Notes: a model not told the origin generated them from the letters alone. 64,000 nt of DNA from Aplysia californica (GCF_000002075.1 NW_004797325.1:1444618-1508617), one strand, 5' to 3'. Positions 4,816 through 51,178 are shown, counted from the first letter of the stretch. Program-made: numbers and translations.

Positions 4816-4949
4816 ATGGAATGGAGCAGAGTCAGAAGATTTCTGGTCATGATGATTCAGGGGAAAGTGGAAGGAACAGAGGAGCTGTATGACAAAATTC
4901 CATTCTTCTTGCGGACAAGACTGCATGACTTCATCGACAATGTTCAATG
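4816..4949 (+). CDS. STAT: STAT coding exon 1 (N-terminal domain)
   Basis: ATG in good Kozak context (atcATGG). [45 protein letters not shown] matches the STAT N-domain pattern W..LY..P...R..L...I....W. Donor gtaacc, phase 2. Confidence 0.88.

Positions 4950-51178: not shown

What the first reader, a model, noticed from the sequence alone, without database searches (positions are those of the whole stretch)
4816..51178. Hidden, intact but highly divergent 1181-aa STAT gene spanning 46 kb
Seen: 20 GT-AG exons splice into one uninterrupted frame with all STAT domains in order. Established: canonical animal STATs are roughly 750-850 aa and strongly conserved in the DBD and SH2, and model invertebrates have only one or two. 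Inference: this is a fast-evolving extra paralogue. An unbroken frame across 20 exons in transposon-riddled DNA suggests it is under selection, possibly defining a non-canonical invertebrate cytokine or antiviral signalling branch.
Basis: partly seen in the sequence, partly recalled or inferred. Interest (0 to 1): 0.82.

Follow-up and report, generated by a model that had tools for sequence, protein, structure and literature searches.

The report
Divergent second STAT gene in Aplysia
The window holds a real, intact, transcribed 20-coding-exon gene for an 1181-residue, very divergent STAT-type transcription factor of the sea hare Aplysia californica; RefSeq already lists it as an "uncharacterized protein", other snails and slugs share it, and the published Aplysia immune-gene survey that lists a single STAT does not include it.

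Summary
A 4660-nt transcript contig (L016) lies on the window in 20 blocks at 99-100% identity. All 19 introns between coding exons are GT-AG. The ORF runs from the ATG at 4816 to the TGA at 51176-51178 and is 1181 codons long. Exon by exon it equals XP_005092996.2, "uncharacterized protein LOC101845304" of Aplysia californica. The gap at 37260-37359 lies inside intron 15 and does not touch the frame.

It is a true STAT relative, but too divergent for Pfam: no domain reaches its cut-off in the Aplysia protein. A profile of nine gastropod orthologues hits only STATs in the PDB (STAT3 E=7e-18). The AlphaFold2 model's first 45 Foldseek hits are all STATs. Four intron positions and phases match the canonical STAT5-like gene on contig C289. 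The SH2 arginine (R660) and a tyrosine 96 residues on (Y756) are conserved. DNA-contact motifs are changed.

The gene is not hidden and not unique. Orthologues occur in Lymnaea, Physella, Biomphalaria, Bradybaena and Candidula, some auto-named STAT1-like or STAT5B. I found no paper that describes the family. Selection is supported only indirectly, and any role in cytokine or antiviral signalling is untested. I class it as a new member of a known kind, of moderate interest.

The parts
4803..4949 (+). First coding exon. Acceptor AG at 4801-4802, ATG at 4816. Start of the STAT N-terminal domain (..[22 protein letters not shown]). The donor splits the Trp codon (TG|G).
   Evidence: cDNA L016 alignment; identical to P0014 aa 1-45; the canonical STAT on C289 has the same donor position in its Trp codon.
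6835..7006 (+). Coding exon 2 (aa 46-102), N-terminal domain. Genome/cDNA difference at 7005 (K102 in the genome, M in the cDNA).
12110..12199 (+). Coding exon 3 (aa 103-132), end of the N-terminal domain.
13439..13537 (+). Coding exon 4 (aa 133-165).
15153..15237 (+). Coding exon 5 (aa 166-194), coiled coil.
17529..17701 (+). Coding exon 6 (aa 194-251), coiled coil.
20297..20445 (+). Coding exon 7 (aa 252-301), coiled coil (..[16 protein letters not shown]..).
   Evidence: the profile aligns to the STAT3 coiled coil.
21465..21620 (+). Coding exon 8 (aa 301-353), end of the coiled coil.
25094..25234 (+). Coding exon 9 (aa 353-400), start of the DNA-binding domain.
25529..25823 (+). Coding exon 10 (aa 400-498), core of the DNA-binding domain. 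It holds NTVYKQFFR at the place of the STAT 'VTEE' motif. This exon was the query of the big protein search.
28595..28687 (+). Coding exon 11 (aa 499-529): [31 protein letters not shown], the counterpart of STAT 'SLPVVVISN..WYN'. Both exon borders lie at the same place and phase as in the canonical STAT on C289.
29981..30122 (+). Coding exon 12 (aa 530-577), linker domain.
   Evidence: Pfam STAT_linker E=5.6e-4 on the open piece
31452..31492 (+). Coding exon 13 (aa 577-590), linker domain.
34206..34330 (+). Coding exon 14 (aa 591-632), end of the linker (..[23 protein letters not shown]).
36496..36668 (+). Coding exon 15 (aa 632-690), first half of the SH2 domain ([15 protein letters not shown], Arg660). 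Its acceptor lies in the Gly codon of 'DG', as in the canonical STAT.
37260..37359 (.). Assembly gap (N), inside intron 15 (36669-37392). It does not touch coding sequence.
   Evidence: Its letters were neither sought nor used.
37393..37560 (+). Coding exon 16 (aa 690-746), second half of the SH2 region. It is weakly modelled and is not recognised by Pfam.
39296..39371 (+). Coding exon 17 (aa 746-771). It holds the conserved tyrosine Y756 (..[15 protein letters not shown]..).
40083..40293 (+). Coding exon 18 (aa 771-841). It holds the basic cluster KKRR 794-797, conserved as RKR in the orthologues, and begins the S/T/P-rich tail.
46506..46626 (+). Coding exon 19 (aa 842-882), tail.
50277..52060 (+). 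Last exon. Coding to 51175 (aa 882-1181, ending ..SPDSGIF), stop TGA at 51176-51178, and 3' UTR to at least 52060, where the contig ends.
   Evidence: Sequencing runs too small to be genome shotgun hold 95-100% of its sampled words.

Best explanation
The stretch 4803-52060 (+) is the gene LOC101845304 of Aplysia californica. It is a functional, spliced, protein-coding member of the STAT family of latent transcription factors, and it belongs to a divergent orthologue group found across heterobranch gastropods.

Shown here:
- 20 coding exons give one open 1181-codon frame, present in a spliced transcript.
- The protein is homologous to STATs over the coiled coil, DNA-binding domain, linker and the first half of the SH2 domain, and the N-terminal domain is recognisable at family level.
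- Ancestral STAT intron positions are kept, so the gene arose by duplication of a STAT gene at the DNA level, not by retro-copying.
- A canonical STAT5-like gene sits elsewhere in the same genome.

Inferred mechanism. The family keeps the SH2 phosphotyrosine-binding arginine (R660), the following serine (S662), and an invariant tyrosine in a [DE]-Y-[KRQ] motif 96 residues downstream (Y756). This is the same spacing as R609 to Y705 in STAT3. The protein most likely works like a STAT: a tyrosine kinase phosphorylates Y756 (Aplysia has one JAK according to PMC9334734), two molecules dimerise by reciprocal SH2-phosphotyrosine binding, and the dimer binds DNA and activates transcription through the long C-terminal tail.

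Its DNA target is probably not the classical GAS site. The position of the base-contacting Asn (STAT3 N466) is an invariant Gly, and the 'VTEE' motif is 'VYKQ'.
For: Gene structure and transcript.

Identity with XP_005092996.2 of Aplysia californica.

Homology to STATs:
- The profile of 9 orthologues matched only STAT chains in the PDB. STAT3 scored 7e-18, STAT5B 2e-16 in one stretch covering DBD, linker and SH2, STAT1 6e-16, STAT2 3e-11, STAT6 5e-9 and Dictyostelium STATa 3e-3.
- In Pfam, STAT_int is over its cut-off in three orthologues (34.1, 33.9 and 27.7 bits). STAT_bind, STAT_linker and SH2 give collinear sub-threshold hits.
- In the Foldseek search of the AlphaFold2 model against the PDB, the first 45 hits are all STATs. 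The best E-value is 1e-20, and TM-score is 0.69 to the STAT5B core.
- The nearest ESM Atlas clusters are all STAT clusters.

Shared intron positions and phases with the canonical STAT on C289.

Conserved R660 and Y756.

Orthologues in Lymnaea, Physella (2), Biomphalaria (2), Bradybaena, Candidula and an unnamed stylommatophoran-like transcriptome.

The core is much better conserved than the coiled coil and the tail.

The canonical STAT5-like gene is present on C289.
Against: No Pfam STAT domain reaches its curated cut-off in the Aplysia protein itself. STAT_linker scores 19.6 bits and STAT_int 18.0 bits.

The second half of the SH2 region is not recognised by Pfam, and AlphaFold2 models it with pLDDT below 50. 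An intact phosphotyrosine pocket is therefore not shown. The basic residue at the position of STAT3 K591 is not conserved.

Spliced RNA evidence comes from one assembled contig of one run. Two poly-A RNA-seq runs gave at most 0.7x depth on exons 14-18 and no junction reads.

No phosphorylation, dimerisation or DNA-binding data exist. No dN/dS could be obtained.
Confidence: 0.8

Rival explanations
1. It is a STAT-derived protein that no longer signals through phosphotyrosine. Examples would be a constitutively nuclear transcription factor or co-factor, or a partner or decoy that modulates the canonical STAT5-like protein through the N-terminal and coiled-coil domains.
For: Only the N-terminal half of the SH2 domain is detectable (Pfam SH2 profile positions 3-38 of 77), and the rest is poorly modelled. 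The basic residue at the STAT3 K591 position is lost. DNA-contact motifs are changed: N466 position is Gly, and VTEE is VYKQ. A conserved basic cluster (KKRR/RKR) that looks like a classical nuclear localisation signal follows the Tyr segment. The tail is about 400 residues long.
Against: R660 and S662, and the tyrosine at canonical spacing, are invariant across eight orthologues that otherwise share only 30-40% identity. That is hard to explain without a phosphotyrosine-SH2 function. The DBD is the second best conserved region after the linker.
Confidence: 0.15
2. It is a transcribed but decaying pseudogene, or a mis-assembled gene model, whose open frame is fortuitous.
For: Expression was very low in two poly-A runs. 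No Pfam domain is over its cut-off. The 5' non-coding exon of the transcript was not found in the assembly.
Against: The frame stays open for 3543 nt across 20 exons, and all introns are GT-AG. Full-length open orthologues exist in at least five other genera, with conserved core blocks. The transcript and the genome differ at only 6 coding sites and none disrupts the frame.
Confidence: 0.03

Closest known systems
Canonical invertebrate STAT5/6-like STAT (the Aplysia gene on contig C289, taken to be LOC101861517 of PMC9334734; Drosophila STAT92E is the textbook example)
   Same: Same domain order (N-domain, coiled coil, DBD, linker, SH2, Tyr). At least four intron positions and phases are shared. 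Shared motifs include TVRLLGG, TLSLP, W-x7 exon end, DG|IIxGF and GTxxxR-x-S.
   Different: Single exons of the two genes do not find each other significantly. The canonical gene passes the Pfam cut-offs for STAT_int, STAT_alpha and STAT_bind even exon by exon, whereas this gene passes none. It has VYKQ for [13 protein letters not shown] for VVVTVHGNQ and RPS for RFS. It is about 350-400 residues longer at the C-terminus.
Vertebrate STAT3 / STAT5B core structures (PDB 3cwg, 1bg1, 6mbz, 6mbw)
   Same: These are the best sequence-profile hits (E 7e-18 and 2e-16) and the best fold hits (TM-score up to 0.69 over about 540-600 columns). The spacing from the SH2 Arg to the Tyr, 96 residues, equals that from STAT3 R609 to Y705 (STAT3 numbering from established knowledge).
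   Different: Identity in the structural alignments is only 15-17%. The residue at the STAT3 N466 position is Gly. There is no clear affinity to either the STAT1-4 branch or the STAT5/6 branch.
Gastropod orthologues auto-named by NCBI: 'STAT1-like' and 'uncharacterized LOC131939325' (Physella acuta), 'STAT5B isoform X1' and 'STAT5B-like isoform X2' (Biomphalaria glabrata), and unnamed products of Lymnaea stagnalis, Candidula unifasciata and Bradybaena similaris
   Same: Same family. Length is 920-1156 aa. Identity is 45-58% in the DBD-linker-SH2 core to the Physella query. The invariant blocks NFxRVEQNxVYKQFFR, SLPFxFxTGxNQ, PWxDGxIYGFCS, RPS, [DE]Y[KRQ] and a C-terminal DSG[IV] motif are the same.
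   Different: Overall identity to the Aplysia protein is only 30-35%. Physella and Biomphalaria each have two copies, while the Aplysia assembly shows one. In Aplysia the C-terminal DSGIF is the very end of the protein.
Divergent nematode STATs (the C. elegans STA-1/STA-2 type)
   Same: The nearest ESM Atlas clusters include nematode proteins in which only about 20% of members are recognised by the STAT Pfam models. This is another case of STATs drifting beyond the domain thresholds.
   Different: This is a lead only, with no alignment made. As far as I recall, the nematode STATs lack the N-terminal domain, which this family keeps.

Membership tests
[quoted passage not shown] | N-terminal STAT interaction domain (Pfam PF02865) | tested here: met
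   The Aplysia protein scores 18.0 bits, E=0.004, under the cut-off of 26. Orthologues P0005, P0010 and P0012 score 34.1, 33.9 and 27.7 bits, over the cut-off. The AlphaFold2 model has pLDDT of about 90 for residues 10-120. The feature is met at family level and is sub-threshold for Aplysia alone.
[quoted passage not shown] | Four-helix coiled-coil domain (PF01017) | tested here: met
   There is no Pfam hit. The family profile aligns to the STAT3 coiled coil with independent E=2.4e-5. The model shows long helices at 139-341, which fall within the Foldseek alignments to STAT cores.
[quoted passage not shown] | Ig-like STAT DNA-binding domain (PF02864) | tested here: met
   Pfam is sub-threshold in the orthologues (best 22.7 bits, E=1.6e-4) and gives no hit in Aplysia. 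The profile matches STAT5B at E=2e-16 in one stretch across DBD, linker and SH2. The beta-sandwich is modelled, and Foldseek TM-score is up to 0.69.
[quoted passage not shown] | DNA-contact residues of canonical STATs (Asn at the STAT3 N466 position; VTEE motif) | tested here: not met
   In the HMM alignments the N466 position is an invariant Gly, with an invariant Asn two residues later, and VTEE is VYKQ. This argues for a changed DNA target, not against family membership.
[quoted passage not shown] | Linker domain (PF21354) | tested here: met
   It scores 19.6-21.9 bits (E 1e-3 to 2e-4), under the cut-off of 27. It aligns throughout to STAT3 and STAT5B in the profile search.
[quoted passage not shown] | SH2 domain with the phosphotyrosine-binding arginine | tested here: inconclusive
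   Arg660 and Ser662 are invariant (GTxxxRPS). Pfam SH2 matches only profile positions 3-38 of 77 and is sub-threshold (18.3 bits). The second half of the domain has pLDDT below 50. The basic residue at the K591 position is not conserved.
[quoted passage not shown] | Conserved tyrosine C-terminal to the SH2 domain that is phosphorylated on activation | not testable with these tools
   Tyr756 in a [DE]Y[KRQ][LIM] motif is invariant in all eight full-length orthologues and lies 96 residues after Arg660. Phosphorylation itself cannot be tested here.
[quoted passage not shown] | Gene structure shared with bona fide STAT genes | tested here: met
   Four intron positions and phases are identical to those of the canonical STAT on C289: in the Trp codon that ends the first coding exon, before TLSLP, at the end of that same exon, and in the Gly codon of 'DG' before the SH2 domain.

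The most novel reading that the evidence does not exclude
The gene represents an unrecognised, ancient STAT clade, at least as old as the common ancestor of sea hares, pond snails and land snails and possibly older. On this reading it is not a derived copy of the STAT5/6-like gene. It would have a re-specified DNA target site, a classical NLS-like basic cluster and a conserved C-terminal DSG[IV] motif, and it would give heterobranch molluscs a second JAK-STAT output, or a JAK-independent one, that domain-based immune-gene surveys have missed.
Probability: 0.25. Interest if true: 0.6.

Novelty: new member of a known kind. Interest (0 to 1): 0.42.

Why it matters
Aplysia is a major neurobiology and ageing model. 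Its published immune-gene inventory lists one JAK and one STAT (PMC9334734). A second STAT with a conserved activation tyrosine but altered DNA-contact residues would change how JAK-STAT read-outs are interpreted in Aplysia, and also in the schistosome vector Biomphalaria, which has two copies of this family. The case also shows concretely that domain-threshold surveys miss fast-evolving signalling paralogues. It is not a new kind of system: it is a STAT, already modelled in RefSeq, and automatic annotation has named its orthologues STAT-like in other snails.

Tried and rejected
- Whole-genome six-frame scans with PF02864, PF02865 and PF01017 found only the canonical gene on C289 and never the window.
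- Pfam on single open pieces of the window gave only STAT_linker at E=5.6e-4.
- phmmer of the linker and SH2 exons against the PDB gave no STAT.
- tblastn of window pieces against the canonical locus was swamped by shared repeats. The only exon-level echo was TLSLP at E=0.24.
- The word search with the last exon found nothing, and with the full Lymnaea protein it found only that protein itself.
- I first took 'EVSTLPLL' after 25823 for the SLPVVV motif. It is intronic and part of a repeat. The true motif is in exon 11.
- The single read-laying run (34200-40199) gave no junction evidence. X5 and X15 proved to be DNA runs, and the two poly-A RNA runs hardly cover the exons.
- dN/dS on the only close transcript pair (L017 and L018) was useless. 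The pair is 99% identical, with 12 differences, and is probably the same species. All other pairs are 30-64% identical and so saturated.
- The 219-nt 5' exon was sought in the window and in the genome without success.
- No paper names LOC101845304 or XP_005092996. Literature searches for a described molluscan divergent STAT clade found none.

Full report
**Where the window comes from**

The window is G000:C55:1444618-1508617 of a 927,310,431-base assembly in 4332 contigs. The organism is Aplysia californica. The protein that the window encodes is letter for letter XP_005092996.2 of that species.

**Checking the observation**

Single exons carry very little signal.
- Six-frame scans of the whole genome with the Pfam STAT models found a canonical STAT on contig C289 at about 760.6-808.3 kb, but never the window.
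- Pfam on nine open + strand pieces gave only STAT_linker, at E=5.6e-4 and 20.7 bits, on 29981-30274.
- phmmer of the linker-like and SH2-like exons against the PDB gave no STAT.
- The word search with the last exon gave nothing.

Because the family scans and the word search left the protein open, I used the one exhaustive protein search on the longest internal exon (25554-25823). It returned seven representatives, among them proteins of 1075, 1019 and 700 residues. A word search on the conserved core of one of them (P0006, residues 365-725) brought in the family:
- two Physella acuta proteins, named 'STAT1-like' and 'uncharacterized';
- Lymnaea stagnalis, Bradybaena similaris and Candidula unifasciata proteins;
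- two Biomphalaria glabrata proteins, named 'STAT5B' and 'STAT5B-like';
- P0013, a 1169-residue product of a Logan transcript contig.

P0013 is this gene. Its contig L016 (SRR385813, 4660 nt) lies on the window in 20 blocks at 99-100% identity. After the junctions were resolved, all 19 introns between coding exons are GT-AG.

The cDNA ORF from the ATG at window 4816 has 1181 codons. An in-frame stop lies nine codons upstream, and the ORF ends in TGA at 51176-51178.

The 90% cluster of P0013 also holds P0014 = XP_005092996.2, 'uncharacterized protein LOC101845304 [Aplysia californica]', 1181 aa. I translated each window exon in its own phase and checked each split codon. All agree with P0014 and there are no stops.

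**The joined step was left out**

Exons were searched by reference. For whole-protein work I used the database proteins P0013 and P0014, which equal the spliced product.

**The gap**

The N run at 37260-37359 lies in intron 15 (36669-37392).
- The cDNA passes from 36668 to 37393 with nothing in between.
- The split codon TA|T = Tyr agrees with P0014.
- The orthologues are collinear across the junction.

The frame is therefore continuous, and only the intron's length is unknown. In one search some DNA contigs of a public run reached into the gap. I did not read or use those letters.

**Expression**

- L016 is spliced at every intron, so it derives from RNA.
- Runs of only 26-118 million letters hold 95-100% of the sampled words of the last exon. 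That is far too little sequence for shotgun coverage of a 927-Mb genome, so these runs are most likely transcriptomes. This is an inference.
- My single read-laying run (34200-40199) gave no independent junction support. X5 and X15 turned out to be genomic DNA, at about 42x and 7.5x with introns covered. The two poly-A RNA runs gave at most 0.7x on exons 14-18 and no joints at exon borders.

Splicing therefore rests on one assembled contig plus the RefSeq model.

**Is it a STAT?**

Yes, but it lies beyond Pfam's reach.
- Pfam: the Aplysia protein scores 19.6 bits for STAT_linker and 18.0 bits for STAT_int, both under the cut-offs. Among the orthologues, STAT_int passes its cut-off three times (34.1, 33.9 and 27.7 bits). 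STAT_bind, STAT_linker and SH2 appear as collinear sub-threshold hits.
- Profile against the PDB: a profile of nine family members matched only STAT chains. STAT3 scored 7e-18, STAT5B 2e-16 (one stretch over DBD, linker and SH2), STAT1 6e-16, STAT2 3e-11, STAT6 5e-9 and Dictyostelium STATa 3e-3.
- Fold: the AlphaFold2 model, built on a 9-sequence alignment, has mean pLDDT 50. The N-domain is about 90. The coiled coil, DBD and linker are 60-90. The SH2 region and the tail are under 50. Its first 45 Foldseek hits in the PDB are all STATs, with best E=1e-20 and TM-score 0.69 to the STAT5B core.
- ESM Atlas: the nearest clusters are all STAT clusters.
- Gene structure: four intron positions and phases are the same as in the canonical STAT on C289. 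They lie in the Trp codon ending the first coding exon, directly before TLSLP, at the end of that same exon, and in the Gly codon of 'DG' before the SH2 domain. That points to a DNA-level duplication of a STAT gene.

**The canonical gene**

C289 carries exons with VTEE, TLSLPVVVTVHGNQ..VLWDNAF and IIGFVSK..GTFLLRFSDSEIGGITIAW. From memory these are STAT5-type motifs. A search of the genome with P0014 found no second copy of the divergent family.

**What is kept and what is changed**

Kept in all eight full-length orthologues:
- the SH2 arginine and the following serine (R660, S662);
- Tyr756 in a [DE]Y[KRQ][LIM] motif, 96 residues after the arginine, which is the spacing from R609 to Y705 in STAT3;
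- blocks such as NFxRVEQNxVYKQFFR, SLPFxFxTGxNQ and PWxDGxIYGFCS;
- a basic cluster (KKRR/RKR);
- a C-terminal DSG[IV] motif.

Changed:
- the position of STAT3 N466 is an invariant Gly;
- VTEE is VYKQ;
- the basic residue at the K591 position is lost;
- the second half of the SH2 domain is unrecognisable.

Conservation by region, as mean pairwise identity, is 48% in the DBD, 52% in the linker and 47% in the SH2 region. It is 36% in the N-domain, 21% in the coiled coil and 24% in the tail. Family members share only 30-40% identity between orders and 64% between two helicoid snails. The family evolves quickly, but its core is constrained.

**Mechanism**

My best reading is a canonical STAT cycle: tyrosine phosphorylation of Y756, reciprocal SH2-phosphotyrosine dimerisation, and then DNA binding and activation through the long S/T/P/Q-rich tail. 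The DNA target is probably altered. Homology, architecture and residue conservation are shown. Every biochemical step is inferred.

The main rival is a STAT-derived factor that no longer uses phosphotyrosine (about 0.15). A pseudogene or an assembly artefact is practically excluded.

**Comparison with what is known**

The gene is not hidden, because RefSeq models it exactly, though without a name. The domain-based survey 'In search of the Aplysia immunome' reports a single JAK (LOC101861981) and a single STAT (LOC101861517). Its supplement lists only that STAT (PMC9334734).

No paper in the library names LOC101845304 or XP_005092996. My searches found no description of this gastropod family.

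One unverified lead remains. The S2 Dataset of PMC8195618 lists a transcript XM_005092939.2, annotated by best hit as STAT5B, in the 'blue' co-expression module of ageing sensory neurons with membership 0.43. It is distinct from the canonical XM_013084387.1. I guessed that accession from the usual XM/XP numbering offset and could not confirm that it is this gene's mRNA.

**Not done**

- A meaningful dN/dS. The only close pair, L017 and L018, is 99% identical with 12 differences.
- Junction mapping beyond one 6-kb stretch.

**Verdict**

It is already annotated, it is shared with other heterobranch gastropods, and it has no evidence yet for a special signalling branch. I class it as a new member of a known kind, of moderate interest.

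Noticed in passing
L016:1-219 (transcript contig); window 1-4802: The transcript has a 219-nt 5' non-coding exon spliced to the acceptor at 4801-4802. It is not present in the window and was not found anywhere in the assembly. It may lie in an assembly gap (for example 814-913, not examined), or the 5' end of the contig may be chimeric.
   Followed up: partly
window 10052-10954 (-) and 8073-8450 (-): Intron 2 holds a reverse-transcriptase fragment (RVT_1, E=3.5e-8) and the HTH part of a Tc1/mariner-type transposase (HTH_Tnp_Tc3_2, E=4e-7).
   Followed up: partly
window about 25840-25943, 30150-30270, 40520-40720, 48550-48710 and 49460-49730; also C289 at about 801.9-802.5 and 809.4 kb: A short interspersed repeat recurs in many introns of both STAT loci and produced misleading protein-level matches. 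Its translation reads ..[28 protein letters not shown].. or ..[18 protein letters not shown].., depending on frame. At 25824-25845 it mimics the STAT 'SLPVVV' motif just after a true donor site.
   Followed up: partly
window 4935, 7005, 25193, 25679, 28630, 40283, 51179: There are seven single-base differences between the genome and the 2011 transcript contig. Three are synonymous, three are non-synonymous (K102M, K386N, T838M) and one is in the 3' UTR. They are presumably alleles.
   Followed up: yes
window 35400-35600, 36000-36400, 37000-37200, 37800-38400, 39600-39800: Intronic repeats in these bins draw many poly-A RNA reads and very high summed contig depth. One is a 33-base 'goes back' joint at 36171-36203, seen in 36 and 66 RNA reads. 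These are transcribed repeat families, not part of the gene's mRNA.
   Followed up: no
P0014 residues 794-797 and 1177-1181 (window exon 18 and the end of exon 20): Two motifs are conserved in the family. One is a basic cluster (KKRR/RKR) after the tyrosine segment. The other is a C-terminal DSG[IV] motif, followed in most orthologues by SPSP, and it forms the very C-terminus in Aplysia. They resemble a classical nuclear localisation signal and a phosphodegron. The resemblance is from memory and is untested.
   Followed up: no
G000:C289 at about 760.6-808.4 kb (+) (loci L010-L015): This is the canonical STAT5-like gene of the same genome, spread over at least 48 kb. Its exons pass the Pfam cut-offs for STAT_int, STAT_alpha and STAT_bind, and it has a textbook SH2 exon.
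   Followed up: partly
PMC8195618, S2 Dataset, sheet 'blue', row 243: Transcript XM_005092939.2, annotated there as STAT5B and distinct from the canonical XM_013084387.1, may be the mRNA of this gene. That would show expression in Aplysia sensory neurons. The accession link is my guess and is unverified.
   Followed up: partly
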